From assembly GCF_006345805.1 (NCBI RefSeq), contig NC_043020.1:4154001-4218000 (forward strand): a stretch of 64,000 nt of DNA. The letters run 5' to 3'. The notes beneath the pieces were generated by a model. The model was not told where the DNA came from and did not search any database. It saw only the letters and a list, made by a program, of their open reading frames with translations. Source of the stretch: Octopus sinensis (lineage: Eukaryota). Below, in pieces: positions 5,955 to 46,466 of this stretch (positions are counted from its first letter, which is position 1; each line of letters begins with the position of its first letter). Made by a program: the position numbers and the translations under genes.

Positions 5955-7382
5955 GCAGGTTTACCAGATAAAAGCAACACCCGATTCCTACAACTGGATA
6001 TCGAGGATTACTACGCCTCTATATCGGAGAGCTTGCTGATCGATGCGATTAACTTCGCCAGGAGGTCCTCCACCATCACCGAGGCCGAGCAAGATGTGAT
6101 CCTCCACGCACGTAAGACTTTTCTTTTCTATGACGGATCCCACTGGATCAACAAAAAATCTGTGACCCCCTTCGACGTCAGCATGGGTGCTAACGACTCT
6201 GCTGAAATAAGTGACCTAGTGGGCCTTTTCATCCTCCATAGGCTGAAAACCCTATTCACAGGCCTCTCCGGTGGTCTTTACCGAGATGACGGCCTTTTCG
6301 CCCTCCACAATATAAACCCCAGGACCACGGATGGGTTCCGGAAAAACCTTCACACCTTCTTTAAAAACTTAGGCCTTAGGATTACCCTAGAATCCAACTT
6401 AACAAAGGCTAACTTCCTCGATGTCACCCTCGACCTAAAAACCTCACTTTATTACCCGTACCACAAACCAAATGAATCCCTTAGATATATAGATATCAAT
6501 TCCAACCACCCCAAAAATATATTAGATAACCTAGTAAAAAGTGTCTCAATTAGAATCTCTAGCCTGTCCGCCACGGAAGATATCTTTAAAGCCGCAGCCC
6601 CCTATTACAACGAGGCCCTGGCCCGCAGTGGTTTTAAAGATAAGATTACCTACACTAGTATAGCCCCACGCCAACCCAGGAAAAATAGACGAAGACACAT
6701 TAGCTGGTACAACCCCCCCTTCAACCGTGAGGTCGCTACACCTGTAGCTAAGATCTTTTTCACTCTCCTACAGAAACACTTCCCCACCCAACATAAGTAC
6801 TACACTATCCTAAATAAGAACACTATTAGACTCTCCTACTCTACCACGCCCAATCTAGCCAGGAACCTAGCCAACAACAATGTGAAAAAACTTAACATAT
6901 CTACTTTCTCCGGGGCCCATCCAACGTCCGATAGCAGTTGCAACTGCCATGATAAAACCACCTGCCCCCTCAACAACAACTGCCTACAGAGGGAACTAGT
7001 ATATAAATGCGAGGTAAGATCAGGCCTTGACGATAAAAGTAAATCCTACATTGGAATGACGTCAAACAGCTTTAAGACCCGCTGGTACGCACATACACAC
7101 TCGTTCCGGCGACAGGATAAATCCAACCAAACTACCCTCGCCGCCCACATCTGGTACCTTAAAAGGAACTCAATCCCCTTCAAGACCAAGTGGAAACTAC
7201 TACAGAAGGCGCGCTCGTACACAGGAGGACATACCTGCTGTGACCTATGCATATCAGAGAGCCTAGAGATCTTGTTCGCCAAAGGCCCTCTCCTTAACAA
7301 ATTTTCAGAACACTCCCCTAATTGCATGCATAAGAAGTATGCGAACTACAAGAACTATAGACCTACCCGGCAACCTGATTGA
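5955..7382 (+). CDS. Penelope-type reverse transcriptase / GIY-YIG endonuclease ORF (N-terminally truncated)
   Basis: Frame is open from 5955 and includes FLQLDIEDYYASI; further motifs GVSMGA-like DVSMGAND, YRDDG, NFLDVTLDL, SNHPKNI, KSYIGMTSNSFKTRWYAH, CDLCISE. Confidence 0.92.
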   Translation, partial: AGLPDKSNTRFLQLDIEDYYASISESLLIDAINFARRSSTITEAEQDVILHARKTFLFYDGSHWINKKSVTPFDVSMGANDSAEISDLVGLFILHRLKTLFTGLSGGLYRDDGLFALHNINPRTTDGFRKNLHTFFKNLGLRITLESNLTKANFLDVTLDLKTSLYYPYHKPNESLRYIDINSNHPKNILDNLVKSVSIRISSLSATEDIFKAAAPYYNEALARSGFKDKITYTSIAPRQPRKNRRRHISWYNPPFNREVATPVAKIFFTLLQKHFPTQHKYYTILNKNTIRLSYSTTPNLARNLANNNVKKLNISTFSGAHPTSDSSCNCHDKTTCPLNNNCLQRELVYKCEVRSGLDDKSKSYIGMTSNSFKTRWYAHTHSFRRQDKSNQTTLAAHIWYLKRNSIPFKTKWKLLQKARSYTGGHTCCDLCISESLEILFAKGPLLNKFSEHSPNCMHKKYANYKNYRPTRQPD

Positions 7383-7650: not shown

Positions 7651-8150
7651 GCTTGTATGTGTGTGTGTGTGTGTATATATGTATATGTGTTTGTACGTAT
7701 ATGTGTATATATGTGTATATGTATGTGTGTGTGTGTATATATGTGTATGTATGTATAAAATATTATAAAATTAGGGCTTAGTAAAATAAAATAAATTACT
7801 TACTAAACTTTCTAGAAATAGCAGCCAATAAAGGTTTTTAGCCTCTTCCACTACTTAGAGAATTTTTTCCCTCTAACATTGTTTACTCAAAATAATAATG
7901 GTCCCTTTACATACTGAATTCTTGGTGAATTTGATTAATAACTAATTAACTTTACCCTCCCTTGTTGATATATATATATATGTGTATGTGTACATGTATG
8001 TATATATATGTGTGTGTGTGTATGTGTGTATGTATGTATTTGTATATGTGTGTGTGTATATGTATGTGCGCGCGTGTGTGTGTATGCATGTGTATGTATA
8101 TTTGTATATGTATGTGCATGTGTATGTATATGTGTATATATATGTATATG

Positions 8151-8191
<41 letters not shown>

Positions 8192-8360
8192 GTATGTATA
8201 TGTATGTATATATGTGTGTGTATATGTGTATTATGTATGTATTTATATAGATATGTAATTTTTTATATATATATGTATGTATATGCATCTGTCTGTGTGT
8301 GTGTATGTGTATATATGTGTATCATTATTGCGTATGTATACATGTATATGTGTATATGTA

Positions 8361-8401
<41 letters not shown>

Positions 8402-8420
8402 GTATATATGTGGGGGTATA

Positions 8421-8453
<33 letters not shown>

Positions 8454-8616
8454 ATATGTGTATGTGTGTGTATATATATATATATATATGTATGTGTGTA
8501 TGTGTATATATGTATGTATATGTGTATGTGTGTGTACATGTATATATATGTGTGTGTGTATATATATATATGTTTATATGTGAGTATGTAGAGATATAAG
8601 TATATGCATGTGTATA

Positions 8617-8666
<50 letters not shown>

Positions 8667-8887
8667 GGTATGTGTATCCGTGTATATATGTATGTGTGTG
8701 TGTATGTATATGTATGTATGTGTGTATATATGTATGTGTATATGTGTATGTGTGTGTATATATGTGTATATATATATATATATATTATATGTATGTATGT
8801 GTATGTGTATGTGTGTGTATGTGTGCATGTATGTGTATGTGTATATGTGTATATATATGTATGTGTATATGTATGTATATGTGTGTA

Positions 8888-8958
<71 letters not shown>

Positions 8959-9495
8959 GTATATATGTGTATGTGTGTATATATATATGTATATATGAGT
9001 GCGCGTGTGCGTATGTATGCATATATGTATGTATGCATGTATATGTGTATGTATATATGTGTGGAAGTGTGTGCATATATGTATATGTAAGTATGTGCGC
9101 GTGTATGAGTATGTATGTATGATTGCACACGTGTATATATATGTGTGCGTGTGTATATATATGGATGCGCGTGCGTGCGTGCACGTGTATGGGTACGCAT
9201 GTGTATATGTGTATGTGCGTGTATGTGTATGTATGCATATATGTATGTATGCATGTATATGTGTATGTATATATGTGTGTAAGTGTGTGCATATATGTAT
9301 ATGTAAGTATGTGTGCGTGTATGAGTATGTACGTATGCTTGCACACGTGTATATGTGTGTGTGTGTATACATATGGATGCATGTGCGTGTGGGCACGTGT
9401 ATGGGTACGCATGTATATGTGTATGTGCGTGTATGCGTATACGTGTATGTATGTTTGTATGTGTGGGCGTATATTTGTATATGTATGTGTGAGTG

Positions 9496-9550
<55 letters not shown>

Positions 9551-9774
9551 GATGGGGGTGTGTGTATGCGTATAAGTGCATGTAAGTATGGATGTATGGA
9601 TGTATGTATGTATGTTTACGTATGTATGTGTTTGTGTGTATATGTATGTAGGTGTGTGTATGTATGTGTGTATATATGTATATATATATATATGTGTGTA
9701 TATATGTTTGTGTATGTATATATATGTGTATGTATGTGTGTGTATATATATGGGTGTGTGTGTATGTATGTATG

Positions 9775-9812
<38 letters not shown>

Positions 9813-9944
9813 TGTATGTATATATATATATATATATGTACATGTATGTGTGGGTATATATATATATATATATATATAGGTATGTATCTGTATGTAGGAG
9901 TATATATATGTGGGTGTGTGTGTGTATGTGTATATGTGTATATA

Positions 9945-9983
<39 letters not shown>

Positions 9984-10319
9984 TTATTGGTGTATATATA
10001 TAGACTAGCCTCCTAAAGTGTAGACATGAATCTGTAGGTACGAGTACGTATGTGTATATACGTGAACGTATGTAGATGTTTGTATGTATGAATATAACGC
10101 GTGCGTACGTGTATGTGTATGAGTGTACGAATGGGTGTATGTACGTGCTAATGAGTGTGCGTGCGGGAACGAGTACTTGCCTTCTAGTAGACAGACAATT
10201 TGGACATGCTGCCATCGCCAGGATCCTTAGCTCTAGCGATCAAAGATAACAAAAGTAATAAATGAAGATAATAAAATTAAAATTAGGGAATGGGCCTGTA
10301 TTGGATTGTGTATATATAT

Positions 10320-10356
<37 letters not shown>

Positions 10357-10480
10357 GTGTATGTATATATATATATATGTGTGTATGTGTATGTGTGTAT
10401 GTGTAGGTATGTATAGGCACACATGTGTACGTATGTGTGTGTGTATGTATATGTGTTTATGTATGTATGTGCACACATTT
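7465..10480. repeat. Compound (GT)/(AT) microsatellite field inside the Penelope element
   Basis: About 2.5 kb of alternating purine-pyrimidine repeats with short unique interruptions. Confidence 0.95.
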
Positions 10481-10709
10481 TATTTTTTTATTTTTTATTT
10501 TTTTATTTTTTATTTTTTATTTTTTATTTTTTATTTTTTATTTTTTATTATTTTTTTATTTATCTATTCTTTCATCTAACTTACCACTGACTCCTTGACC
10601 ACTCCCCCAAGTATGATATTTTGCGCTATGCCTACCCCCAAAAAAATCCACCACCACCACTCCTTTAAACCTGCCTAATGTATAAATGCTAATACAATTC
10701 TTGTTAAAT

Positions 10710-14658: not shown

Positions 14659-14726
14659 GCTTTAATTAAATAATAAAAAAAAAATTCATGAAGTGAAGGA
14701 GGGACAAACAGACAGACATCAAAACA

Positions 14727-14826
14727 GTGTTGACCAAAATGAGAGAAACCAGAGAAATCAGGGGTTTCCTACCAAGGAATGGTTTTAGGAAACTTCCTTC
14801 ATAAGTTACGTCAGAATGGTCAACAC
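14727..14826 (-). promoter_or_regulatory. SECIS element (type II) in the GPX4 3' UTR
   Basis: Minus strand reads AUGA-AGGAAGUUUCCU-AAA-ACCA-UUCCU-UGGU-AGGAAACCCC-UGAU: AUGA/UGAU quartet (14802-14799, 14760-14757), helix II GUUUCCU/AGGAAAC, unpaired AAA and apical mini-stem; begins about 35 nt after the stop codon. Confidence 0.9.
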
Positions 14827-14861
14827 CGTAGAATGTCAGTCTGAGAGAGTAAGGGGTTTGG

Positions 14862-14894
14862 TTACCAATAAATAGCCAAGTCTTTTTCTATTTC
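14862..14894 (-). CDS. GPX4: GPX4 exon 6, terminal (EIEKDLAIYW*)
   Basis: Polypyrimidine tract plus TTTCAG acceptor; 33 nt including TAA; IEKDL motif of GPX4 C-termini. Confidence 0.93.
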   Translation of the reverse strand, partial: EIEKDLAIYW

Positions 14895-14955
14895 CTGAAA
14901 AGACAAGAGACAGACAGGTAATTAGATAGATAGATTGATTGATATATATATATAG

Positions 14956-15025
<70 letters not shown>

Positions 15026-15850
15026 AAGAGATAGACAGACAGACAGATGTGCGAGAGAGAGAGCAGATATAGAAAGGTAGTCAGACGATGGAACCATTCC
15101 TACACTGGCAGAATGCTCAATGCTATTTCTTCTGCATCTTTGCATTCTGAGTTCAGATGCTGCCAAGACAGATTGCCTTTCATCCTTTCAGAAGTCATTA
15201 AAATAAGGAACAGTTGAGCACTGGACTCAATGTAATTGACTCCCGTCTCCCCTCAAAAAATAGCTGGCCCTGTGCCAAAACTAGAAATTATAACCTTTCT
15301 TCCTATTTACGGTGCAATCCTCTGGCTTGCCAGCTTCTGTCAAAGCATTCAACCCATACCAGCATGGAAGACATATGTTAAATGATGATGCTCTACCTAT
15401 CTCTATCTACACATATACACACACACACAGGAACGAGAGCTCCTCACACTAAGGGAGACAATGTGTACTTGACCTCTCTTACCATGAGTCTGCATATTTT
15501 ATAGTAACCTGACTCAACCATTGCAAATGGAATCGAATTCGAGTCTGACCTCATTTCATTCTGTCTCATAAGTTTGGAATTGCCTGACTGAAAACGAGCC
15601 AACCAGCTCAAAACTGAGTCAGTCGCGTGATCTTGTGGTCTGCTAGAGGATGATTCACTCCCCGCCCCCGCTAGCAATATATACTGTATAAATAAGGTGT
15701 ATTACCACACCGATAACCAGCTGGTGGAGGATCTGCCTGGGGTTAAACTAGTAGTAAAATGCAACAGCCACTTTGATTTGGCGATTAACTTTACTCTGAT
15801 CTCTTCTCGAAATTTTACAGCTGGCAATTTTGCTCATATAAATATACAAA

Positions 15851-16200
15851 GGCATAGGAGTGGCTGTGTGGTAAGTAGCTTGCTTACCAACCACATGGTT
15901 CTGGGTTCAGTCCTACTGCGTGGCACCTTGGGCAAGTGTCTTCTACCATAGCCTCGGGCCGACCAAAGCCTTGTGAGTGGATTTGGTAGATGGAAACTGA
16001 AAGAAGCCTGTCATATATATATGTATATGTATAGATATGTATGTGTGTGCCTATACGTTTGTGTGTCTGTGTTTGTCCCCCCCCAACATCACTTGACAAC
16101 CGATGCTGGTGTGTTACGTCCCCCGTAACTTACAAAGAATAAGTCCTGGGGTTGATTTGCTTGACTAAAGGTGGTGCTTCAGCATGGCCATAGTCAAGAA
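15851..16200 (+). mobile_element. Family-B tRNA-headed SINE
   Basis: GGCTGTGTGGTAAG (A-box-like), GGTTCAGTCCT (B-box-like), shared body GGCACCTTGGGCAAGTG...GATTTGGTAGA. Confidence 0.85.
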
Positions 16201-16253
16201 AAAGCGTAAAGCATATATATATATATGTGCATTTAAATGTGTATATATATAGA

Positions 16254-16618
16254 GATGCAGGAGAGGCTGTGAAGCTCGCTTCCTAACCACGTGGTCTTGT
16301 GTTCCGTCCCATTGCACAGCACCTTGGCAAAGTGTTTCCTACTGTAGACCCAAGTTGACCAAAGCTTTGTAAAGGGATTTGGTAAACAGAAACTGAAAGA
16401 AGCTTGGTGTGTGCATGTGAATACACACACGTGTTTGTCCCACATCACCACTTAACCAGTGTTGGTTTGTTTACATCCCCACAACATGGTCTGGGAGAAG
16501 ACACCAACAGAATAAGTAACAGATTTAAAAACATAAGTGCTCAATCAATTTGTTTGACTAAATCCTTTAAAGTAGTGCCCCAGCATGGTCGCTTTCAAAT
16601 GAATGAAACAAGTAAAAC
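16254..16618 (+). mobile_element. Family-B SINE, tandem to the previous copy
   Basis: Diverged copy of the same body. Confidence 0.75.
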
Positions 16619-16828
16619 ATGTACATACATATGTATATATGTAATATACATTTGTTAATGTGTATATATATATATATATATATGTGTATGTATATATATA
16701 TATACATAACCATTTACGTATCAAGGTACATACATCATTAATAGGCCAGTTACTGAAGTATTTGTCCTGAGATAACATTTCATGATTTGGGTTTTAAAAA
16801 CAATAACTGTTTCAACTGCATATACCAG

Positions 16829-16870
<42 letters not shown>

Positions 16871-17561
16871 CACTCACACACACACACACACACACACACT
16901 TAACCTCCACTTTTCCATTCCCACATTAGCGTGGCTGTTGTGGCAGGTTTTCCTACAGCTGGACACCCTCCTTGTTGCTATCTTCCCGTGACCAGAAAGA
17001 TCTCGGAAGAGACAAAGGACGCCGCTTGTCATGGCAGTGGCACTTGTTTACAAGATCCAGAAAAAAGGAGACATCAACACACGCATACAAACAGGCTTTG
17101 GTAGGCCCAGGGTTATAGCAGAAGACATTCCCAAGGTGCCATGAAGTGGGTATGAACCCAAAACCATGTGGGAAGCAAACCTCAACTACACAGCCACTCC
17201 TGTGCCCCCTTTTGTATATCAAAGAGCAAGTATGGTTTCATGGGGACAGAGTTTGCCTTATTACTGTTTGGTCTCAAGTCCTGACTGTCTGTGAATCCCC
17301 TTGGGTAAGTGACTTCTATTACTGCTGAGGGACAGCCAATGCTTCATGAGTGAAATTGGTAGGTGGAAACTGTTGAGAAGCCTGGCATTTATAAGTGTAC
17401 ATGAAGTGTTTGAATGTTTATAATCTGTATCTTGTAATGAGAGCATTGAGTTTAAAATTCAGTCAAGTTTCTTGTCAGAAAACAAAAAAAAAAACAAAAC
17501 AAATAAACTCAACCTTGAGATCAGCATTTTGAAAAATGAGTGGAAGAAATAATCTTTATTG

Positions 17562-17830
17562 AATCATCATCATCATCGTTTAACGTCCGTTTTCCATGCT
17601 AGCATGGGTTGGACGGTTCGACCAGGGTCTGGGAAGCCAGGAGGCTGCACCAGGCTCCAGTCAGATCTGGCAGTGTTTCTACAGCTGGATGCCTTTCCTA
17701 ATGCCAACCACTCCGTGAGTGTAGTGGGTGCTTTTTACGTGCCACCGGCACAGAAGCCAGTCAAGGCGGCGCTGGTATCGGCCACGTTCGGATGGTGCTT
17801 TTTACGTGCTACGGCACAGGGATCACAACT
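17562..17830 (-). mobile_element. Family-A repeat
   Basis: Reverse complement of the family-A core with a (TCA)n end. Confidence 0.85.
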
Positions 17831-18509
17831 ACAGTTTCCATTGATTTTTGATGTTGATGTACTTGACACAACAGGTCTCCTCAAGCACAGGGTCGAAACA
17901 GTGTTTCTTTACTTGTCACCTGCACAGGGGTCAGTCCAGCGGCACTGGCAACGGCCGGGTGCCAGTCATAGGATTTGAATAAAAGGGAAAAATTATACAA
18001 TGGATCGAATTATTGTTTTTGTCTTCGATCAGTAAATTGCTATTTCCTATTTGCTTCTATCTAGAAATCAAGGGAGATAACTATTCTCTTCAAACGTGGC
18101 TTTTGTGATATTTGGAAACTGACTTATTTTTCATTCCATTTCAAACAGATTCAGCAGAGAGTTGCTGAAACAAAAATATCATTATAGCAAATATTCTGTT
18201 GTCAGTTTGCTTGACATTAACCACTTGAGCATGTCCCCTGGTGGCTAACAATATGTGTATCTCTGATCACGAGCATCATAGAGATTTGCATAAATGTAAC
18301 AAAAGCAAAGTTTGAAGGAAATATTAGTAATTTCTCATACTGGGGTTAAGTAAATAGGGGGGAAAAAACAGTTGCTACCCAAGGACAAACACTGTGTTAT
18401 CAAGGGAAAGGCATCCAACTGTAAAACAATGCCTCAATATCATTTAAGAAACAAATAAAAGACCAGCTTAGCATTGTTAATGGCAGAAGAGGAAAGCGTC
18501 AAGAGTCAC

Positions 18510-18594
18510 CTTTGGGGCTGTTTTTGGACCATAACGTTTCACAGGAACACCTTCTTTGTTGATGAGGAATTTGGTCAAATTCCATTTGATGCCA
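18510..18594 (-). CDS. GPX4: GPX4 exon 5 ([29 protein letters not shown])
   Basis: TTGCAG acceptor and AAG|GTGACT donor; IKWNxTKFLI..G..VKRYGP motif. Confidence 0.95.
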
Positions 18595-18849
18595 CTGCAA
18601 CATGAAATACAAATAAATACACTTTAGTTTATTCTTTTAACAGTTTCAGTCAATGGACATCGACCATTCTGGAGCATTACCAGCAAGTATTTTAGTCAGT
18701 TATATCAATGCTGGTATTTAATCCTGGATTAAATGGCTGAGGAGTTAACCAGTTCACTTTGTAAACCTGAAGTCTTGAGTTCAATTTGACTGTGGAGCAA
18801 CTTGGGTGAATGCAAGTCACCAAAGAGAAACTGTGTGGAAACTTGGTGA

Positions 18850-20560
18850 ATGGAATGCAAAGCTGTGATTCAAAGTTGGGCCTGAGGACAAGAGAGGAAG
18901 ACCCAGTCAGAGGGAACTGGCATGTGCCCAAATTGGATAGCAGGACCGCATGGTGTGATGCTAGCAGCATTGCGATAGGAGTTGTGTTGGAAATTGGAGG
19001 TACCAAAGAGGAGGATGCTGCCTGGCTTCAAAAAGCAGACGACCACAACCACATCAATGTTGCTGAGTTGGATACAGTGCTGAAGGGAGTGAATTTGGCC
19101 GTGAAGGATCAGTAACCACTGACAAGAAGTGGGTGTGAACCAAAGGGGCCGCAGAAAAACAAGTGAAGTGCCACCTAGGGATTCTAGGGGAGCTGATTGG
19201 CAAGTTTGGCCTGAAGCTGAATGTGGTCTTTGTGCCTTCAGAGAGAAACAAGGCAGATGCTCTAACCAGGGTAAAAAAAGGCCTGGTTAGGGGAGCCAGA
19301 AGAATCAAAGCAAGGGGTAGCCATGGTGTGTCAGTTAAATGACCCCGAGCTGAGGAGACTGCATGCCATGCATATGGGCATGGATAAGACCCTGTATCTC
19401 GCCAGGAGGGTTGACGCCAACATTACCAGATGGAGCATCCAAAAGGTAGTCGGGAACTGTGACAGGTGTCAATCCATCGACTCTGCCTCGGATGTACTTT
19501 AGCAGGGAAACATCTTGGTAGAGCACAACTGGAGATGATTAGCAGTGGATGTAACACACTACTGGCAGGGGACGTATGCCTCGATGGTTGATTGTGGGCC
19601 AGGCCGGATGGCCATTTGGAGGGAATTGAGGACAGGTACTGTGGCCGAGATGGCACATATTCTAAACGAGGTATTCTTAGAGCATGGCCCTCTGGGTGAA
19701 TTGCTGATGGACAACAGCACAGCGTTTCATTCAGAGGTGCTGAAGAAGATGCTTGACAGGTGGAAAGGGCACTGCTTTTCCAGAGCAGCATAGAGGCCGA
19801 GTGGAAATGGGATCCTGGAGAGACATCATTGAATGATCAAGGCCATGGCAGAGAGGGGACATGTCCCACTGCTGGAAGTGATGTTCGGGTACAATGTCAC
19901 CCCGATCAGGACAGGCCGAAGAGTCTGTGCCACGTAGTGATAATCAAATATGAATGGCAGCATCCAAGTAAACCATAGAGATGCCCTGTAGAAGAGAGAG
20001 GGCCTGACTTCGTGGAGGTGGGAGATGAAGTCTGGGTGAAGCCACCAAAGGCACCCTGCACAATTCAGTTGAAGAGAGAAATAGTGACGGCTGTTAAGTC
20101 CCAAAACAATATCTCTGTGGATGGAATGCTGCGTCATCTCTTGGACGTTCATAGGATTGTCGCTTCCTTGGATGATGATTGTGGAGAAAAGGAAGAGAAT
20201 GAGGTTCCCAGTTTAAGAAGATCATGACATGCAAGGCGCCCACCCAGGTGGGTGGTAGATTTCGACATGGAGTAAAGTGAGGAAGTGATCTTTGAGATCA
20301 GGGGGGGGGGGGGATGAGCTGCAAGAAGAGGGCCACGACGTCAATGGTCAAGGGACAGACTGGAAGAGGAAGCATGAGAAGTGCCGGGGGAGACAGGATG
20401 AGGTTGGGCTCTTGTAGCTGGCCAAGGCATCGTGAACAGGTGTCAGGGGATTCAATCCTGGGTTGATCAGATAGCAGCAGATGACAGGGTAGGGTAGGAT
20501 CACTGGAGTGACCACTAGACAAGCAGAGCTGAGAGAAGGTAGGTGAACTTCTTTTCATTT
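18850..20560 (+). mobile_element. Degenerate Gypsy LTR retrotransposon (RNase H, integrase, PPT) in GPX4 intron 4, antisense to the gene
   Basis: WCDASSIAIGVVLEIGG..HINVAEL; integrase CDRCQSID, DVTHY, ELLMDNSTAF; G-run polypurine tract near 20300. Confidence 0.85.
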
Positions 20561-20654
20561 CCCACGCATGACAGACATATAAAAAAAAATCTGAAATTAG
20601 TAAATTGGTACTAAATTATTGAGGAAAATAATGAAGTTCAGAAAAGTTCCTTAC

Positions 20655-20803
20655 TCAGTGATAAATCCAGGCTGTTCTTTTTTCAAAAATGTCCACAAAG
20701 GGTGAGCTGACTTGCCATTCACATCGATTTTACTGAACATATCAAAGGAAACGTGATATTTTTTACTAACAAAATCTTTGATTTCTTCGTTAGTTCCAGG
20801 TTC
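20655..20803 (-). CDS. GPX4: GPX4 exon 4 ([49 protein letters not shown])
   Basis: TTTTAG acceptor and GA|GTAAGG donor; QEPG and [13 protein letters not shown] motifs. Confidence 0.97.
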
Positions 20804-21304
20804 CTAAAAGAAACAAAAACAATTTTTGATGCACAAAAATCTCCATCAATTCTAACAATTTCCTATTTTACTTCCAGACTAGAATCTGAGGTGCATTTCA
20901 GTGCTTGTACATAGTTGTTTTATCGGCTAGAAAGAGCAGAAAATCTCCCTCATCTTATACCCTACTATCTAATACAGAATACAGTAGCACCATGGACACA
21001 TCTACTGCTGCAGTAGAGGGTAACCTCACCAAAGAGAGGTTGTAAAAAAATGATTTTCTAATATAGAAAGAAGACCCCCAGTTTTAGGTGCAGGGAGCTG
21101 CTGATTAGATTTTCTCCAGTAGATGACAGGTATTTGGCTTGATAGACACAGCACTGTTGTGGGATGCTCTAACGATTCTGCCAATTGTCTTCCTTTAGGC
21201 ACATAGCAATTGTTAGTGGATGCGTTTAGTCAATTTGATTGATCCCACAACTTGACTGATACTTTATCAATCCCCAGAAGGATTGATAAGGAGGGGACTA
21301 GTCG

Positions 21305-21712
21305 AGTATATTGATCCCAGTGTTTCACTGGTACTTAGTTTATCGACCTCAAAAGGACGAAAAGCAAAGCTGACCTAGGCGAAATTTGAACTCAGAACGT
21401 TAGCAATGGGCAAAATACTGCTAAGCATTTTATCTGGCTTGCTAACAATTCTGCCAGCTCATCATCTAAATATTAATACTAATACTAATACTAATCCTTT
21501 CTACTATAAGCACAAAGATTGAAATTTGGTGGGGGTGGGTTGTTGATTACATTGACCCTAGGGTTTAACTGGTGCTTTATTTTATTGACCCTGAAAGGAT
21601 GAAATGCAAAGTCGACCTCGTCAGAATTTGAACTCTGAATGTAACAATGGGCGAAATTCCGCTAAGCATTTTGTCTGGCGCAGTAACAACTCACTCAGCT
21701 CGCTGCTGAATA
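21305..21712 (-). mobile_element. Two tandem family-C SINEs in GPX4 intron 3
   Basis: Two reverse-complement copies of the family-C body. Confidence 0.8.
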
Positions 21713-22271
21713 ATTTACAGTTCATCTTTGTGCAAAGGCCAGGCTAACTTCAGAAATTTAGATTATCGCTAATAAAATAATATTGAAAATTTAAAGCTGA
21801 TCGGACAAGAGTTGCCTCCCTTATATCACTGATTTAAAAAAAATTAGAATCACTCCGCTGGGGACAATAAGGGGACAACCGAGGGAGAAAGATCGATTTC
21901 AGATACAGGCTTGGCTCGAATATTCCTCAGAAAGTGGACATTAACTGCGACCTCTTTGAGTGGCATTTCATTTGTTACGGAGTCCTAGACGAAATGCCAC
22001 CCAAGGAGGTCAAAGTGAGATTTGAACTCAGAATTTACCAAAATCCCAGAATCCTGACCCCTTTTAAGACTAAACAAAAACAATTTTAGAAAAATAATAT
22101 TAAAAAAATATAATCATCTTTAAAATGTTTTTTGTTTCATGAGCTAAATTTTTAAAATTAAAAAAAAAACCCTTATCTTGTGAAACCCCTAAATTTTATC
22201 TCAGAATTTTGGGCATCCTGTGAAGAAACTTTGAGAAAATTTGTCTTAGAATAAAGAGTTAGAGAACTTAC

Positions 22272-22419
22272 CTGGGAAGCAAATTGGTTACATGGGAAGG
22301 CTAGAATACGAAGACCCTTAGACTCACCATACTTTTGATAAAGTTCTTCTAACTGTGTGTAGTTAGAGGTGGTTAAGCCTCATTTGCTTGCAACATTGAC
22401 AATTATGGCCACATGGCCC
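22272..22419 (-). CDS. GPX4: GPX4 exon 3 with selenocysteine codon ([49 protein letters not shown])
   Basis: TTTTAG acceptor and CAG|GTAAGT donor; in-frame TGA at 22382-22380 in the NVASxUG catalytic motif; ILAFPCNQF signature. Confidence 0.97.
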
Positions 22420-23540
22420 CTAAAATGGATAAAGGAAATCAGAAACAAAGATGTGAGATAACAGTATAACAAGTGAAAGGATCAAAACAAAAATTTAAAT
22501 AATAATTGCAAGTACCTCAGGTTTCAAACGGGGCCAGCATATCCCTGTGGTGACCAAAAGTGTAACAGCAAGGGCACCTGGCATAAAATACCGACTTAAA
22601 ATATCTAACCCTTACTGGCATGGAAAAGTGGACGTAAACTGACAATGGTTAGATGACCGGTCTTTTATTTTATCAACTCCCAGAAGATGAAAGGCAAAGT
22701 CGACTTTGACGTGATTTCAACTCAAAACATTTTGTTTGATGCCCAAACTCAGCCATCCACCACTAATAATAATTGCTTCTGATTTAGAAACAAGGCCAGC
22801 AATTTTGAGGAGAGGGTCTAGTCACTGCCATCCACTCGAGTCCGGATCTAGGATTTCATCTTTTAACTCCAGAAGGGATGAAAGGTTCTGCTTCACATTC
22901 TTAGGTTAACTCAGGCAATCTCATATTGAAAGGTCGACTACTAACACTCTGCTGAGAAGACAGATGGAATGGTCATTACTGGAATGATTTTCATGGATCA
23001 GCTAAATGAAGGCTGAGCCAAAGTTAAATAAGGCTTCCAAATTACTAGAAATAGCAAGCAAATCTCCTACAAATTATACCCAATATTTACAAAACATCGG
23101 TAAAGAGTTATAAGCATTGGTAACCGCATGGCACCAGGATCAATCCTAATGCACAGTTCCGTGGATAAGGGTCTTCTAGAAAGAATCTAATCCAACCGTT
23201 GAGGGTAAACTGGATTAATGGAAACACAGAATCTAATGCAACCTTTGAGGGTAAACTGGATTAATGGAAACACAGAAGTTTGTTGGATGAATTGAACCTG
23301 TCCTTCGGTGATCAATATAAACTGTGGCCTGGATTACTGCCACCACGTAACTGTTGCAAAGAGAAGGACTCTTAGTTTGACAATAACGAACAAGTGAATT
23401 TCTCCAGCCCCCCACCCACACTACCCCATTCATCACTTTCCTCTGTCTCAAAGACTCAGCAAACAGTTCATGGGCTAATTGAGTCTGGGAATAAGAATGG
23501 AAGTCCATGGCTGGAACCCTTTCGAAAACAAATCACTTAC

Positions 23541-23617
23541 CGGTATTTCTCCAGAGACACTTCTTGTCCATCAATAGTCTTAGCAGAAAAGTCGTAGATG
23601 GTTTTAGCTGTCAAAGG
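23541..23617 (-). CDS. GPX4: GPX4 exon 2 (PLTAKTIYDFSAKTIDGQEVSLEKYR)
   Basis: TTTCAG acceptor and CG|GTAAGT donor; matches the PHGPx IYDFSAKxIDG..VSLEKYRG motif. Confidence 0.95.
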
Positions 23618-24835
23618 CTGAAATAACAAACAAATCATTAAATAAGCCTTAATTAACTTGGGGCAATCTTTTGTCCAAATCAAAGGTCACGAACATCAAC
23701 TACGACATAGAAGGCATGGCAATGTGGTTCCACATTTGATCCCATTGTGCAATGGCCCAGACGAGTGTCTTCTACAAAAGCTGCAGATGGGTTAACATTT
23801 CAAGAGTGGAATTAGGTAAGTGGAAATTATACAGAAGCCCAGTAAACACACACATGTATAGCATTGTTTTTAACATTAACCTTTCCATTCTCGCATGCGC
23901 CAGAGGGAATTCACCAAGCCAAATCTTGTCTGATTTTGATGTCCATCTCATCAACCTTTGCTTCTTGCCAAACTAGGTGATATTCCCCACCCGTCAACAG
24001 GACCTTTTTTTTTTTCATGAAAGATTGCAAACGAACACAACTGCGTTTGTTTATGTGTGAGGACACTGGAATCTACACACCCTTTCTAAAATGTTGACTT
24101 ATTAGAATATGTATAATATATAAAGTCTTTTATATATCTAAACTTTTATAAATTATGGATTAAAAAAAACAACTTTCTGTTTGAAGTAAAGGGTACGAAA
24201 AAAAAAAAGATTTAAAAGAAATTACGACCAAAACGGAGAAAATCCAACATTGTCAGACAGCAATTCCGAAAGTCCAACTCTATTTTCCTTTCTCGGGTTC
24301 ATCATTAACTTATTAAAAATAGCGTTGAAGAAAATAAGAGATTTTACTAGGAATGAAGGAGACGCATTTGGAAAAGCAAAAATACGATTATTTGAGTGAA
24401 AATATAACCAGATGGAAACTTATTTGGTAATAAAGTCGTCAATTTACTTGGCATATATGAATGTAGATATAGATAAATGGGGACAAATGCAGTTTCGCCC
24501 GAGGGTTCAGGATGATCGCTTTTAAAATTAAAAGGTAACTGAAGGATTCAATACAAATGAAATATGATATTGTCAGGGACTTCGAAGGTCCGTCGAGTAA
24601 TGTGGCTTGTGCAGACAGAGTCAGAAAAACTTCGAAATCACTGTTACTAAAAGGATTCTAGAGAGGATCTTTCGGAAACGAAACTGAACACAGAGACCCG
24701 CGTGGGTGTATATTGACATCGGTCACAATTATTTCATTTATACACTCATGTAGGTTTCGTTTTGCAATGCGGAATAATAAAGGCAAAGGCCAAATAAATA
24801 ATTATGTCAACAAACAAGAAAATAGAATTCCTTAC

Positions 24836-24913
24836 GTTGCTTGATAAATTACAAGAAAGCGGTTTGGCCGCCAAAAAGCCGGTCAATAAGACCCGACCCA
24901 AGGAAGTCATCAT
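24836..24913 (-). CDS. GPX4: GPX4-type glutathione peroxidase exon 1 (putative mitochondrial targeting peptide MMTSLGRVLLTGFLAAKPLSCNLSSN)
   Basis: 78 nt from ATG to a phase-0 AAC|GTAAGG donor, matching the phase-0 acceptor of exon 2; no acidic residues and rich in R/K/L/S; same position and phase as vertebrate GPX4 exon 1a. Confidence 0.75.
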
Positions 24914-24963
24914 TTTTGCATCGACGGAGTTTGCAACAAAACAAGAAAACACCAGAACCGTTC

Positions 24964-25250
24964 TCTCTCTCTCTCTCTTCCCCCTCTCACACTATTCATA
25001 TATATATCTTCCTCTCTCTTCCCCCCTTTCACACTATTCATATATATCTTCCTCTCTCTTCCCCCCTCTCACACTATTCATATATATCTTCCTCTCTCTT
25101 CCCCCCTCTCACACTATTCATATATATCTTCCTCTCTCTTCCCCCCTCTCACACTATTCATATATATCTTCCTCTCTCTTCCCCCCTCTCACACTATTCA
25201 TATATATCTTCCTCTCTCTTCCCCCCTCTCACGCTATTCATATATACCTT
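24964..25250. repeat. 40-bp minisatellite, about 7 copies
   Basis: Unit cctctctcttcccccctctcacactattcatatatatctt repeated nearly perfectly. Confidence 0.95.
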
Positions 25251-26459
25251 CTTCTCTAACGCATTTTTATTACCTTCATACACTCTCTCTCTCTTTCTAC
25301 TCATACACAGACATGTATATATATGAGAGAGAAGGAGTTATTTATATATATATATATATATAACCCCCTCCCTCTGCCACTCATTTACACTCCTTCTCCA
25401 CACTTTTTTCTGTTCTTTCTTTCCTCCCTCTTCTACTCTCCTTCCTCTCTCTCTCTCTTATTCCCTCTTCTATTCTCTTTTCTTCTCATTTCCTCTCATT
25501 CACTCCCTCTCTCACTTTACTGTTTTCTTTATCAGAAATTTGAGAACCCATTCGCCCTTGTTTCTGTCAAGGTGATCCTACGTTTTGACCTGGATGTCCC
25601 GTATCACCGTTTGTTACAACATCCAACAAATTTCTTTGCATTATTTACTCCGGTTCCCTATGTTCAGGGTTCAAATCTTGCTGTGGGCATTTTTACCTTC
25701 AACCCAAAATTCGCCCCAAAATTCCTTGTCTTGTGCCTATGTTAAAGGATCTTTTCACTTTGACCGGCAGATTTTAAAAATAATTTCTTTGTAACTAAAC
25801 ACTTTTAAACTTCGTATACTGGTAGAATGTGTCAACATAAAACATCTTTTTCTCTTGGCTTTCTTGAGAAAATTCTGTAGTTTGTAAGCTATTTCTTGTT
25901 TAATTTCTTGCATTTCGGCAATTTCAACCAATCAGTGACGTCTATTGAGGTGAATACAATTTCTGCGGTTGTTTGTTAATGCAGTGTCATATCAGTTTGT
26001 CACTGTTATTTGACATATTTCATATGAGTTACGTTCGTATGAATAAAAGATTATCGTTATTAAACTTTCATTAAAAAAAAGGTAAAATCCCCGTCAAAAC
26101 GGAGAAATTCCAAATATGTGATCTTCCTGATCCGAAACTTCCCTCCCCACACCCCCAGAAAAAGTTTTTGTAATAAATTTCTTTAAAATCGTAATCTATG
26201 CCTTTTAAAGGGTATTTGTACAAACTTTCAAAAGACCCCCATTTTCCTGAAAGCTATGAGGGTCAAAATTCGGTTCGTGTGAATTTTCTGAAACTCTTCT
26301 TGCCAATAAATCCCTATTCTGAACCAACCGTGTCTGAGCGGAATTTGATGAAGATTTCGGTGGTGGCGATACACATCTGTAGCTATGTCGGGTTGGAAAG
26401 GTATTTTTTTCTGGCTCTTTAAGTTCAAATCCCGCTGACGTTAATTTTAAGAGGGCTAC

Positions 26460-30868: not shown

Positions 30869-33800
30869 TGTTATGAATTATAATATCCTATCATCAGTTT
30901 CTTTCTACAATAGTAAATAATGGGTAAAAATAAAGATATCTTATTTTGTATTGAATACAAAAATGTGGCCTGGTGTTGATAGATGGGTTCCGTCTTTACC
31001 TAATATAAACAAACGCGTCTTAATTGTTGGACATTCGTGATTAATGGATTAGACAGCAAGCAGAAATAAAGTTTGAATAAAAGCCTTTTTTGAACTGGTT
31101 TATGACAAATTTTATTCAAACTTGATTCTAAATGGATGCCAAAGTGTTCAAGATGATGCTACCAGACGACCCAACTGGGGAAGATTATATTTACTGGAAA
31201 TGGATGCAAAAGCAAAAATCCTCAGTGGAGCAAGAACCTACCCCATCATCAAAGGATCTGAAACCTTCCAGGCAGCAATAGAATGCCTGGACTCAAAGTT
31301 TATAAAGAAAGGTTCAAACATAATGAAGTGCTATTAGTTATGAACTCGAAAACAAAAGGAAAATGAGTCTATAGAAGAATTTATGTCAAGCCTTCAGGTG
31401 CTGGCCAAGAAGTGTGAAATCAAGCCCTAATGGCAGACCGTTTCCGAGAAATTCTAACTGGTGATGCCTTTGTAGCTGGGCTTCATTCACCATCATTCAG
31501 ACAAAGACTTTTTGAGTCATCAAATGACAGCTTAGAAACACTCTATAAGCTTGCTCAGACCATGGAGGTGGCCATTGAAGACACTCGCAACCTATTGCAA
31601 GGCTCAGCTGGTATCAATCAACTACCCCATCTCACAGCCGCTAAATCAGCATGCTTTTGGTATGGTGGAGACATCCATTTAAAAAAAAAATCAATGCCTG
31701 GCAAGAAATTCCACTTACAAAAGGTGTCAGAAGAAAGGTTACTGGGAGAAAGTTTGCCCCTCAAAAAAGCCACCAAAAACCAAACAAAACTTCCCTAAAA
31801 CAGCAGCTGTCACAGAACCTGAGAGTGACTCAGAGGAAAACAGTGATGGGACCTTATCATTCGTCATTTTAACAGTTACAAACAGTACAGTACAGCTCGT
31901 ACCTCTTACAATTAAGGGCAACAATACACAAGCCCTTCTTGACACGGGTTCTGACAGGACATTTATTGAAGCAAATCTTGTTGCAGTCTGGGGACTACAA
32001 TACGGTTGTACCTGCCCAGAAAAAGTAAACTTGGCCAATAACACAGCACTGGGAACTGAAGGCAAACTACAACTGGGAAATAACATGTAATGCTGATTTC
32101 CCTGTGGCTGACCACCTTGTAGCTCCAATCATCATCAGAATTGATATCCTCAGTCAACACTCAGCAGTTACAATTGACTTCAAGGGCACGCTCAAACCCG
32201 TGTCATTCTGCATGTCCATGTCAAGCCCAAAATGTTCCACATACGAACTACTTCCTGGCATATAAAGACCTCTAAGCTCAAACCAATTTCAACAACTTCA
32301 AGATGCAGTCCAAGAAACACAGAGTTTATTCAGCACAGAATAGACAGGTCACTTTCAGAGGACATAATTCGGGAAAGCCGTCGACCCTGGCGAGCTCAAT
32401 ACTTCGTGACATTTAATGGAAGGAAGAAAAGACTAGTGATTGATCACTCGAACACTATAAATATCTACACACAACTGGATGCCTACCCTACCCCACAGAT
32501 CAATGACCTTCTAATTGAAGTAGCAGCAAACAAGATTTTCAACAACGTAGGTATGACAGCTGCATATCACATCACCAGGTGGAACTCCTACCCAAAGACT
32601 ATAAACTGACAGCATTCAAAGCAGGGGGGAGATTGTATGACTTTATACACCTTGTTGCAGCAATTTTCCAGTGTGTCATGGATGAATTCATAAAAGGAAA
32701 CAATCTTCAAAAAACCGTTTCCAATCTAGATGACATCATCCTGAACATGATGATAACCTCAGGAGATTTATCCAGGCAGCTGAAACAGCTGGCATGAATA
32801 AGGACAAGAGTCAATTCTCTCAGGACATATTATTGGAAATTCAACAATAAAACCTGACCCTAAAAGGTATCAAGCTCTGCTAGATATGCCAGAACCAAGA
32901 ACATTGAGAGAACTAAATCAAATAATAGGAATTTTTGCAGACTCACCATTCCACTTTCAAGGGCCAGAGAGAATATCAACAAAACAGGACTGCCAGAAGA
33001 AGCAAAATCAGCAATTGCATCTTTCAAGACTGCATTGGTAAATTCCGCAGTTACCGTTCCACAACCTGGACTACCACTTACCAGTGAGACAAATGCTTCT
33101 GACCTAGTCTTGGGAAGGAAGGTCAGTGGCCTTCTATTCAAGGTCCCTTTCAAAAACAGAAAAACACCAATCCATTGTTGCAAGGGAAGCCTGTGCAATT
33201 GTAGAATGTTTCCACAAATGGCGCCACTTAATACATGTTTCCCCTTCCTGCAGCATCGTCACTGATCAACTTTCGGTAGGGATAACTTTTAATAAGCAAG
33301 GGACATCAAAAATGAAAAACTTATATGCTGGCACTTGGATCTCTCAGATCTTCTTTAGACCAGGAACCCAAAACAAAGCAGCAGACACACTATCAAGATG
33401 TGCAGTAACAAGAGACACTACAACACTAGTAACCCTTCACAAACAACTGCCACCTAGGAGTGACCCATCTACTTCACTACTGTAAAGTACAAAACCTGCT
33501 GTTCTCCCTTAACGAAATCCGTGAAATGACATTCGCTTGCTCTACATGCAACAAACTCAAACCCTGCTTCCACAAACCACTTATGGGTCAATTAATACAG
33601 GCATCGGGCTCTGGGAGTGCCTCTGCATTGGCTTTGTTGGTCTCCTACCATCAACCACACAATACCGTTATTTATTGGTAATAGTCGATGAGTACTCTAG
33701 TTACCCATTTGCAAAGACATGACTACCGAAACAGTAATTTTCCATCTGTTCAACCTCTTTTCATTGTTTGGATCACCAAGTTGTATCCACTCTGACACAG

Positions 33801-34760
33801 GAACCCAGTTTGATAACAAGAAGCCCTGGGACTTCCTTCATGTTAACAGGACAATGATAACTAGAACATCTCCCTATCAACCTCAAGGCAATGGCCAATG
33901 TGAAAGGACCAACTGTATCTTCATGAAGACCATAAATCTAGCACTTAGTTCACTACATCTAGATAAAAGACAATGGTTGACAGTCCTTCCCATGGCACTA
34001 TCAGCCATGAGAGCACTCCTCTGTACAGCTACCAACACAGCCCCCCCCCCCTCCATGAGCAAATGTTTAAATTTTCAATTAAATCATTGACAGTGGGAAA
34101 CATCCTACCTGAATTCCTCCAGAATATCGGAAGCACAATACTTCATCGTTGACATCTCAGAAATAAGGGGGATCCACTTGTAGAAAACATTAAATTGGAG
34201 ACGATTTCTCCCCACTTTGCATGCATACAATTTGGAAACGGATGAATAAATACAGTGTCCGCATGCCACCTCGTTCCAGCAGGACAATCTTTCAATCAAG
34301 GAAGCAAACACACAAAGAGAACCAGGGCTAACTACAAAAACAAGAGTTCAATATAGAACAACATAATCCACAAATAATAAATCGACAAGGAACCGACCCC
34401 AACAGTTCACCAATAGAAGGAATGGAGCTCACAGTCCGGCACCTGAAAACATGAGCAGATTAGCAACTGGAGAATACCTGAACGAGGATGATACTGGGAA
34501 CAAAACGCCAACTGTTCAAGGACAAAAACAGACGAGAAAACTGAGATCAGGACGAATTATTAAGACCCTTTTTTATATTAAGATTTATGTTTTGAATGCA
34601 CCGTGATTAACTTTTCATTCAGCAGGGAAGACTGTTATGTATTATAATATCCTATCATTAATTCCTTTCTACAGTAGTAAATGATAGATAAAAATATAGA
34701 ACTCTAATTTTGTATTGAGTACGAAGATGCAGCATAGTGTGAAATGACGTTGATAGATGG
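30869..34760 (+). mobile_element. Degenerate near-full-length Gypsy element in POLR2E intron 3
   Basis: LTR starts TGTTATG..ATAATATCCTATCAT at 30869 and 34633 (the second preceded by a purine tract); protease ALLDTGSD; RT RLVIDH/LDAYP/NLDDII; RNase H FYSRSL; integrase CSTC, VDEYS, IHSD, PQGNGQCER. Confidence 0.92.
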
Positions 34761-40546: not shown

Positions 40547-40576
<30 letters not shown>

Positions 40577-40577
<1 letters not shown>

Positions 40578-46394: not shown

Positions 46395-46434
<40 letters not shown>

Positions 46435-46435
46435 G

Positions 46436-46466
<31 letters not shown>

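What the first reader, a model, noticed from the sequence alone, without database searches (positions are those of the whole stretch)
14862..24913. Complete selenoprotein GPX4 gene not captured by the ORF track
Six exons splice in frame to a 189-aa PHGPx with UGA at the catalytic position (NVASK-U-GLT) and a matching SECIS downstream. Automated pipelines usually truncate or mis-splice such genes. Selenium GPX4 is the central ferroptosis suppressor, which is relevant to PUFA-rich cephalopod membranes (inference).
Basis: partly seen in the sequence, partly recalled or inferred. Interest (0 to 1): 0.75.

Follow-up and report, generated by a model that had tools for sequence, protein, structure and literature searches.

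The report
Octopus selenoprotein GPx4-type gene, already known

Summary
On the minus strand, six exons with canonical AG/GT borders (24913 down to 14862) join into a 570-nt reading frame. It encodes 189 residues, with one in-frame TGA (22380-22382, codon 65) at the catalytic NVASK-U-GLT position. A type II SECIS element starts 52 nt after the stop codon.

The protein matches Pfam GSHPx (E 2.5e-46) and solved GPX4 structures (E about 1e-58). It lacks both loops of the tetrameric GPx enzymes and keeps the Sec/Gln/Trp/Asn tetrad.

It is not new. It is 93.7% identical, with no indels, to ObimGPx04A (RefSeq XM_014922939.1) of Octopus bimaculoides. That protein is annotated with Sec and placed in the GPx04 class in a 2021 phylogeny (PMC8614756). 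dN/dS against it is 0.20.

Octopus has a second Sec GPx4-class paralogue (04B), so "the GPX4" overstates one-to-one orthology with the vertebrate gene.

The remark on pipelines holds in part. The UniProt model of the same O. bimaculoides gene skips the Sec segment, and several other invertebrate models are truncated or spliced around the TGA. RefSeq, however, modelled it correctly.

The ferroptosis/PUFA idea was not tested. No transcript from this species was available. Interest is low.

The parts
24836..24913 (-). Exon 1 (coding part). ATG at 24913-24911, with a second ATG directly after it. Encodes a 26-residue N-terminal leader, MMTSLGRVLLTGFLAAKPLSCNLSSN. Donor is GT, phase 0.
   Evidence: borders. 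20 of 26 residues are shared with ObimGPx04A, which has the same length. The leader evolves faster than the rest (dN/dS 0.43).
23541..23617 (-). Exon 2, 77 nt (PLTAKTIYDFSAKTIDGQEVSLEKYR). Start of the GSHPx domain.
   Evidence: ttcag|...|gtaagt. Pfam match starts at residue 33.
22272..22419 (-). Exon 3, 148 nt. Carries the Sec codon and the FPCNQF...Q motif (Gln101).
22380..22382 (-). In-frame TGA, codon 65 (Sec), in NVASK-U-GLT.
   Evidence: It aligns with U/C of all GPx homologues. TGA sits at the same codon in O. bimaculoides XM_014922939.1 and in transcript L001.
20655..20803 (-). Exon 4, 149 nt ([11 protein letters not shown]...FITD).
18510..18594 (-). Exon 5, 85 nt. Contains Trp155 and Asn156 (IKWNLTKF).
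14862..14894 (-). Exon 6, coding part (EIEKDLAIYW plus TAA stop at 14864-14862). The exon continues into the 3'UTR.
   Evidence: The C-terminus is identical to that of ObimGPx04A.
14725..14828 (-). Type II SECIS element with its extended basal stem, in the 3'UTR. Rfam match 14809-14745. Core AUGA at 14802-14799, opposite UGAU at 14760-14757. Unpaired UAAA at 14787-14784, 12 nt after the core. Mini-stem ACCA/UGGU at 14783-14771. Outer 12-bp stem 14828-14817 with 14736-14725.
   Evidence: The core fits the UGAN/KGAW consensus quoted in PMC3753652.
14653..14666 (-). Candidate poly(A) signals: ATTAAA at 14666-14661 and AATAAA at 14658-14653, about 90-100 nt past the SECIS. They imply a 3'UTR of roughly 220 nt.
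   Evidence: pattern only; the cleavage site was not observed.

Best explanation
This is a functional nuclear gene of an octopod, not O. bimaculoides itself, for a monomeric GPx4-class (PHGPx-type) selenoprotein. It is the orthologue of O. bimaculoides ObimGPx04A.

**Proposed mechanism.** The minus strand is transcribed and five introns are removed (1.1-3.6 kb, full of SINE-like and retroelement debris). Translation starts at the ATG at 24913.

At codon 65 the UGA is read as selenocysteine. The type II SECIS in the 3'UTR, about 440 nt downstream in the mRNA, recruits the SECIS-binding protein, the Sec-specific elongation factor and Sec-tRNA. This is the standard eukaryotic mechanism.

The product carries a 26-residue N-terminal targeting-like leader and a thioredoxin-fold peroxidase domain with the catalytic tetrad Sec65, Gln101, Trp155 and Asn156.

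It lacks the oligomerisation loop, so it should be monomeric. It also lacks the resolving cysteine of thioredoxin-dependent Cys-GPx enzymes. It should therefore reduce hydroperoxides, probably including lipid hydroperoxides, through a selenenic-acid cycle regenerated by glutathione or protein thiols.

**Shown here:** the gene structure, the homology, the conserved residues, the SECIS anatomy and purifying selection.

**Inferred:** transcription, splicing, Sec insertion, substrate range and where the leader sends the protein.
For: - **Gene structure.** Canonical splice sites and an exact frame.
- **Family.** Pfam GSHPx at E 2.5e-46. The best solved relatives are human and mouse GPX4 and S. mansoni GPx at about 1e-58, against 4e-35 for GPX7, 2e-32 for GPX8, 5e-29 for GPX1 and 2e-25 for GPX3.
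- **Monomeric type.** The alignment shows that both cGPx insertions (YVRPGGG and the roughly 20-residue oligomerisation loop) are absent. The tetrad is present, and there is no Cys in the '[10 protein letters not shown]' block where insect, bacterial and fungal GPx carry one.
- **Orthology.** 177 of 189 residues are identical to ObimGPx04A, with no indel and 100% bootstrap. That protein is listed as SeCys 'Yes' and as class GPx04 in PMC8614756 Table S1.
- **Selection.** Over the first 133 codons dN/dS is 0.20, and 0.11 outside the leader; dS is 0.17 and the TGA is conserved. Against the more distant transcript L001, dN is 0.17 while synonymous sites are saturated, and the TGA is again conserved.
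- **SECIS.**
Against: - No RNA evidence from this species. The exact protein, with W or X at the Sec position or as its two halves, is not in the 15-billion-protein collection.
- The SECIS score is below Rfam's curated cut-off (25.3 against 35). The yardstick transcripts score below it too.
- Support for a GPx4-type clade separate from GPx7/8 and fungal GPx was 100% in one NJ tree but 39% after more octopus sequences were added.
- The phospholipid-binding Lys next to Sec in human GPX4 (UGK) is Leu here (UGL), and the near-universal WNF is WNL. Substrate handling may therefore differ.
- Exon 2 has no in-frame ATG, so a leaderless cytosolic form like the mammalian one cannot arise from this exon set.
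Confidence: 0.93

Rival explanations
1. The locus is a recently inactivated or non-expressed copy (an unprocessed pseudogene) that merely looks intact. The working gene would lie elsewhere in the genome.
For: No transcript of this species was recovered. Introns are heavily invaded by repeats. A 40-bp x 7 minisatellite sits 58 nt upstream of the ATG.
Against: There are no frameshifts or extra stops, and all ten splice sites are canonical. dN/dS is 0.11-0.20 against the O. bimaculoides orthologue, and the TGA, the tetrad and the length are all conserved. The SECIS is intact.
Confidence: 0.04
2. The TGA is a true stop. The gene would make only a 64-residue peptide, or a downstream-initiated fragment, and the SECIS-like hairpin would be fortuitous.
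For: The SECIS_1 score is below the curated threshold. Generic gene callers treat the TGA as a stop, so the ORF is split in two in transcripts L002-L007.
Against: The frame stays open and strongly conserved for 124 codons after the TGA. The TGA occupies the catalytic Sec/Cys column. It is conserved in two other cephalopod sequences. The hairpin has every SECIS hallmark, lies at the usual distance from the stop, and scores like real GPx4 SECIS elements.
Confidence: 0.01
3. It is a GPx4-class enzyme but not the functional equivalent of vertebrate GPX4. The ferroptosis-guarding role, if there is one in octopus, would belong to the paralogue 04B, which RefSeq names 'PHGPx, mitochondrial-like'. 04A would then be a lineage-specific, organelle-targeted or secreted peroxidase with a different substrate or reductant.
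For: Octopus has two Sec GPx4-class paralogues. In my NJ tree 04B, not 04A, sits next to human GPX4, with weak support. 04A has Leu for the Lys next to Sec and WNL for WNF. Its leader is obligatory, because exon 2 has no internal ATG.
Against: Both paralogues are equally similar to human GPX4 (57-59% identity). The internal nodes have 10-40% bootstrap. 04A has the same tetrad as human GPX4 and also lacks a resolving Cys.
Confidence: 0.3

Closest known systems
Octopus bimaculoides ObimGPx04A (RefSeq XM_014922939.1, 'glutathione peroxidase-like', LOC106874999), in PMC8614756 Table S1
   Same: 189 residues with 177 identical and no indel. Same leader, same NVASKUGLT site and same C-terminus. TGA at the same codon. 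376 of the first 399 nt are identical.
   Different: 12 substitutions, six of them in the leader. dS of 0.17 shows a different species. The 3'UTR and SECIS of the O. bimaculoides mRNA were not available for comparison.
Human/mouse GPX4 (PHGPx; PDB 2obi, 6hn3, 5l71 and others)
   Same: 57.7% identity over 168 residues, E about 1e-58. Sec-based and monomeric type, lacking both cGPx loops. Same catalytic tetrad and no resolving Cys. Sec codon in the third coding exon and SECIS in the last exon (the mammalian layout is from my own knowledge). An N-terminal leader precedes the domain.
   Different: Lys next to Sec is Leu, and WNF is WNL. There is no second in-frame ATG for a cytosolic form. No nuclear alternative exon was identified. 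One-to-one orthology is unresolved because octopus has two paralogues.
Octopus bimaculoides ObimGPx04B (XM_014914499.1, 'PHGPx, mitochondrial-like')
   Same: Sec-containing monomeric GPx4-class paralogue from the same lineage, with NVASKUGLT.
   Different: Only 54% identical. It has a much longer N-terminal extension (about 60 residues, with a hydrophobic signal-like start) and FPSNQF instead of FPCNQF.
Schistosoma mansoni Sec-GPx (PDB 2v1m/2wgr)
   Same: Invertebrate Sec-GPx4-type enzyme. E 2e-58 over residues 25-185.
   Different: It has no N-terminal leader. It comes from a different phylum.

Membership tests
Glutathione peroxidase family (Pfam PF00255 GSHPx) | Full-length match to the family profile above the curated cut-off | tested here: met
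   156.2 bits against a cut-off of 27, E 2.5e-46, profile positions 1-108 of 108.
Glutathione peroxidase family (Pfam PF00255 GSHPx) | Catalytic tetrad: Sec/Cys, Gln, Trp, Asn | tested here: met
   Sec65, Gln101, Trp155 and Asn156 align with U46, Q81, W136 and N137 of human GPX4. The human numbering is from my own knowledge, applied to the sequence verified.
GPx4 / PHGPx class (monomeric GPx04) | Absence of the oligomerisation loop and of the YVRPGGG loop of tetrameric GPx1/2/3/5/6 | tested here: met
   Both insertions are gaps in the octopus row, as in human GPX4 (alignment).
GPx4 / PHGPx class (monomeric GPx04) | Groups with GPX4-type sequences rather than GPX1/2, GPX3/5/6 or GPX7/8 in a tree | tested here: met
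   It is separated from the classical GPx enzymes at 97-100% bootstrap. The split from GPx7/8 and fungal GPx has 100% support but only 39%. PDB bit scores are about 200 for GPX4, 125 for GPX7 and 104 for GPX1. Its 94%-identical orthologue is placed in GPx04 by the phylogeny of PMC8614756.
GPx4 / PHGPx class (monomeric GPx04) | One-to-one orthology with vertebrate GPX4 | tested here: inconclusive
   There are two octopus paralogues (04A and 04B). The internal nodes have 10-40% bootstrap. No synteny data were available.
GPx4 / PHGPx class (monomeric GPx04) | Reduces phospholipid hydroperoxides in membranes; protects against ferroptosis | not testable with these tools
   This needs an enzyme assay and a genetic test.
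Eukaryotic selenoprotein gene | In-frame UGA aligned with Sec or Cys of homologues, with conserved coding sequence downstream | tested here: met
Eukaryotic selenoprotein gene | SECIS element in the 3'UTR on the same strand | tested here: met
   It is the only SECIS_1 hit in 17 kb searched on both strands. It starts 52 nt after the stop. It scores 25.3 bits, within the 20.4-33.2 range of five real Sec-GPx4 transcripts, all of which fall below Rfam's cut-off of 35.
Eukaryotic selenoprotein gene | Sec is actually inserted at the UGA | not testable with these tools
   This needs 75Se labelling, mass spectrometry or ribosome profiling.
SECIS element, type II | Core UGAN/KGAW forming tandem G.A/A.G pairs; helix II; conserved unpaired A's 11-12 nt from the core; an extra apical mini-helix | tested here: met
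   UGAA/UGAU core. Helix II of 3+6 bp with a small internal loop. UAAA lies 12 nt after AUGA. A 4-bp mini-stem has a 5-nt loop. Helix I is followed by a 12-bp outer stem. The consensus is taken from PMC3753652. SECISearch3 itself was not available.

The most novel reading that the evidence does not exclude
The window's species may lack a correct public model of this gene. GPx04A may also be a cephalopod paralogue that has diverged in function from the canonical GPX4 role. Three features point that way: an obligatory N-terminal leader with no cytosolic start, Leu in place of the lipid-binding Lys next to Sec, and WNL in place of WNF. The protein would then be restricted to an organelle or secreted, with an altered substrate or reductant preference.
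Probability: 0.15. Interest if true: 0.3.

Novelty: already known. Interest (0 to 1): 0.12.

Why it matters
The practical value is in annotation. This is a clean, fully specified Sec-GPx gene model, with exons, Sec codon, SECIS and candidate poly(A) signals. It can correct or check the annotation of this octopus genome.

It also illustrates concretely how generic pipelines damage selenoprotein genes. The UniProt model of the sister species' gene is spliced around the TGA, while RefSeq's dedicated procedure modelled it correctly.

Biologically, it confirms that octopods keep Sec, not Cys, in a GPx4-class enzyme under purifying selection. That is expected for molluscs. It does not open a new question by itself.

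Whether either of the two octopus GPx4-class paralogues guards membranes against ferroptosis-like death remains an open, testable question of ordinary kind.

Tried and rejected
- **Exact-sequence look-up.** I looked up the 189-aa product with W or X at the Sec position, its N- and C-terminal halves, and a start at the second Met. None is in the collection.
- **Second homologue search.** A search with only the post-TGA 124 residues, meant to surface same-species transcript fragments, found none closer than the 95%-identical part of the O. bimaculoides model.
- **Transcript L001.** It is 75% identical with a TGA at the same codon, but it ends at its stop codon, so it gave no SECIS to compare. 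Synonymous sites against it are saturated, so no dN/dS ratio could be computed.
- **Whole-window Rfam runs.** Nothing reached the curated thresholds. The permissive run was useless as a SECIS control because 603 low-complexity 'miRNA' matches to TA/TG repeats filled the 150 listed rows. I used the 17-kb run instead, which had a single SECIS hit, together with the yardstick transcripts.
- **Pfam on retroelement-like frames.** The frames in intron 4 and several other ORFs gave no hit. An earlier call failed on stop codons.
- **tRNA scan.** No tRNA was found, and so no tRNA-Sec, in the window.
- **Pseudogene and 'true stop' readings.** Considered and rejected; see the rival explanations.
- **Structure prediction.** Not run. 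With 58% identity to solved GPX4 it would add nothing.


Full report
**1. What is in the sequence**

The window is eukaryotic, AT-rich and full of microsatellites and transposon debris. The finding lies on the minus strand.

Translating the six candidate segments and joining them gives these exons:
- Exon 1: 24836-24913
- Exon 2: 23541-23617
- Exon 3: 22272-22419
- Exon 4: 20655-20803
- Exon 5: 18510-18594
- Exon 6: 14862-14894

Every acceptor ends in AG after a pyrimidine-rich stretch. Four donors read gtaag and the fifth gtgac. The exons sum to 570 nt, which is 189 codons plus a TAA stop.

The only internal stop is TGA at 22380-22382 (codon 65), in the context NVASK-TGA-GLT.

A bacterial-style ORF list cannot show the gene. 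No minus-strand ORF of 100 aa or more touches an exon. At 40 aa, only fragments overlap exons 1, 2 and 6.

**2. What the protein is**

With Cys in place of Sec, the product matches Pfam GSHPx end to end (156 bits, E 2.5e-46).

Among solved structures, the best natural matches are human and mouse GPX4 and the S. mansoni Sec-GPx, at E about 1e-58 (about 200 bits). The other classes score far lower:

| Class | E-value |
|---|---|
| GPX7 | 4e-35 |
| GPX8 | 2e-32 |
| GPX1 | 5e-29 |
| GPX3 | 2e-25 |

I took reference sequences for human GPX1, 2, 5, 7 and 8, one GPX6 chain (7fc2) and bovine GPX1 from PDB alignments. I checked my recalled GPX1, GPX4 and GPX7 against the same alignments.

The multiple alignment shows four things:
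- The octopus protein lacks both insertions of the tetrameric enzymes: the YVRPGGG loop and the oligomerisation loop of about 20 residues.
- It keeps the catalytic tetrad (Sec65, Gln101, Trp155, Asn156).
- It has no cysteine in the block where thioredoxin-dependent Cys-GPx enzymes of insects, bacteria and fungi carry their resolving Cys.
- Two small departures from human GPX4 are visible: UGL instead of UGK next to Sec, and WNL instead of WNF.

Neighbour-joining trees separate it from classical GPx enzymes at 97-100% bootstrap. They place it among GPx4-type sequences. The node separating these from GPx7/8 and fungal GPx had 100% support in the first tree and 39% in the second.

**3. The SECIS**

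Rfam's SECIS_1 model gives one hit at 14745-14809 on the minus strand, starting 52 nt after the stop codon. It scores 25.3 bits and is the only SECIS hit in the 17 kb searched on both strands.

The score is below Rfam's curated cut-off of 35. The E-value is 0.013 for 601 nt searched against all 4227 families. By simple division, that is about 3e-6 for this one model.

To judge the low score, I fetched six transcript contigs of Sec-GPx4 relatives. In five of them the ORF is visibly split in two by the TGA; in the sixth only the post-TGA part was called. Five of the six have a SECIS_1 hit in the 3'UTR. These score 20.4-33.2 bits, all below the cut-off, and start 48-127 nt after the stop. The octopus element is therefore typical.

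Read directly, it has every hallmark of a type II SECIS:
- The core is UGAA opposite UGAU, which fits the UGAN/KGAW consensus quoted in PMC3753652.
- Helix II has 3+6 base pairs.
- An unpaired UAAA lies 12 nt from the core.
- A 4-bp mini-stem closes a 5-nt loop.
- Helix I is extended by a 12-bp outer stem.

The 106-nt region folds at -37 kcal/mol, 6.3 standard deviations below shuffled controls.

ATTAAA and AATAAA follow at 14666-14653. They would give a 3'UTR of roughly 220 nt.

**4. Relatives and what is already known**

The closest protein in the large collection is UniProt A0A0L8GSX8 of O. bimaculoides. Reading it shows a faulty model:
- The segment [22 protein letters not shown] is replaced by 38 unrelated residues.
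- The exon-5 donor is read through (…KVTLYTFLFCH).

Other public models fail in similar ways:
- Mytilus coruscus 'GPX4' and Magallana gigas skip the Sec segment.
- Protopolystoma is spliced around it.
- Ixodes, Solemya and Batillaria start just after it.
- A Logan transcript call translated the TGA as W.

This fits the published picture. [quoted passage not shown]

The decisive result came from Table S1 of 'Going Forward and Back: The Complex Evolutionary History of the GPx' (PMC8614756). It lists ObimGPx04A (RefSeq XM_014922939.1) with SeCys 'Yes' and 189 residues.

The window's protein is identical to it at 177 of 189 positions, with no indel. Six of the 12 differences lie in the leader.

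Over the first 399 nt given in that table:
- 376 nt are identical.
- dS is 0.17.
- dN/dS is 0.20 overall, 0.11 outside the leader and 0.43 within it.
- The TGA is at the same codon.

So the window comes from a related but different octopod, and the gene is under purifying selection.

The same table lists three further O. bimaculoides GPx genes:
- A second Sec GPx4-class paralogue, ObimGPx04B, 54% identical to the window protein.
- A Cys GPx07.
- A Cys classical-like GPx.

Both 04A and 04B are 57-59% identical to human GPX4. My trees do not resolve which one is the vertebrate gene's orthologue.

**5. How it most likely works**

The sequence of events is transcription, removal of five introns, and initiation at the ATG at 24913. 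The SECIS then directs recoding of UGA-65 to Sec.

The result is a monomeric selenoperoxidase with a 26-residue N-terminal leader. The leader has two basic and no acidic residues and a hydrophobic core, and it is conserved in O. bimaculoides. Where it sends the protein is unknown. From memory, its 'SLGR..LL' start resembles the mitochondrial leader of mammalian GPX4. That is a lead, not a test.

Exon 2 has no in-frame ATG. A leaderless form would therefore need another first exon.

The structure, homology, conservation and SECIS anatomy are shown here. Expression, Sec insertion, substrate and localisation are inferred.

**6. Verdict**

The gene is nonetheless an ordinary, expected orthologue of an already correctly annotated and published octopus selenoprotein. 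The ferroptosis/PUFA angle is speculation.

Novelty: already known. Interest: low.

Noticed in passing
window 24971-25257: A 40-bp minisatellite (7.2 copies, 96% matches; CTCTCTCTTCCCCCCTCTCACACTATTCATATATATCTTC on the + strand) ends 58 nt upstream of the GPx start codon. It therefore lies in the presumed 5'UTR or promoter region of the gene.
   Followed up: partly
window 24911-24922 (minus strand): A three-codon upstream ORF (ATG CAA AAA TGA) overlaps the main ATGATG start by four bases. Whether it is part of the transcript is unknown, and the O. bimaculoides CDS has a single ATG.
   Followed up: no
window 18810-20230 (+ strand, inside intron 4, antisense to the gene): Stop-ridden retroelement-like reading frames, with an integrase-like H..H..C..C stretch (LHAMHMG...CDRCQ) visible by eye. 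Pfam gave no hit at E <= 0.01.
   Followed up: partly
window 15860-15950, 16260-16360, 17560-17800 and similar copies at 39464-39799 and 40491-40814: Repeated SINE-like elements fill the GPx introns and the rest of the window. One family begins GGCTGTGTGGTAAGTAGCTTGCTTACC...; another begins CATCATCATCGTTTAACGTCCGTTTTCCATGCTAGCATGGGTTGGACGG....
   Followed up: no
window 33126-34090 (+): Remnant of an LTR retrotransposon: RT-associated RNase H (PF17917, E 3e-11) followed by a weak integrase-core match (PF00665, E 8e-4, below the cut-off).
   Followed up: partly
window 6033-7382 (+) and 4347-4859 (+): A 449-aa ORF ends in a GIY-YIG-like motif (SYIGMTSNSFKTRWYAHTHSF), suggesting a Penelope-like element. 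A 170-aa ORF looks like the C-terminal end of a LINE reverse transcriptase. Neither matched Pfam at E <= 0.01.
   Followed up: partly
window 7900-10600 and 46000-50000: Very long, AT-rich (GC 17-27%) TA/TG/CA microsatellite tracts. They produce hundreds of spurious sub-threshold 'miRNA' matches in Rfam (mir-297, mir-3149, mir-466, mir-1277) and long fake ORFs rich in Y, I, H, C and V.
   Followed up: yes
proteins P0001, P0129, P0153, P0161, P0126, P0135, P0188 (public databases, not the window): Public models of invertebrate Sec-GPx4 genes are spliced around the Sec codon or start just after it. They come from O. bimaculoides (UniProt), Magallana gigas, Mytilus coruscus, Protopolystoma, Ixodes, Solemya and Batillaria. 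The set could serve as a test for annotation pipelines.
   Followed up: partly
protein P0164 (Sulfurospirillum sp. 1307) and similar metagenome proteins: A bacterial Cys-GPx is 63% identical to the octopus enzyme and nests inside the animal GPx4-type group in the NJ trees. I did not examine whether this reflects strong conservation, gene transfer or contamination.
   Followed up: no
L001 1-466: The related cephalopod-like transcript (SRR29271460) has 466 nt of AT-rich sequence ending in ...TCCAG just before its ATG. This looks like a retained intron 1. In that species the ATG falls within the part corresponding to exon 2, where the window has TTG, so a leaderless form may exist there but not here.
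   Followed up: no
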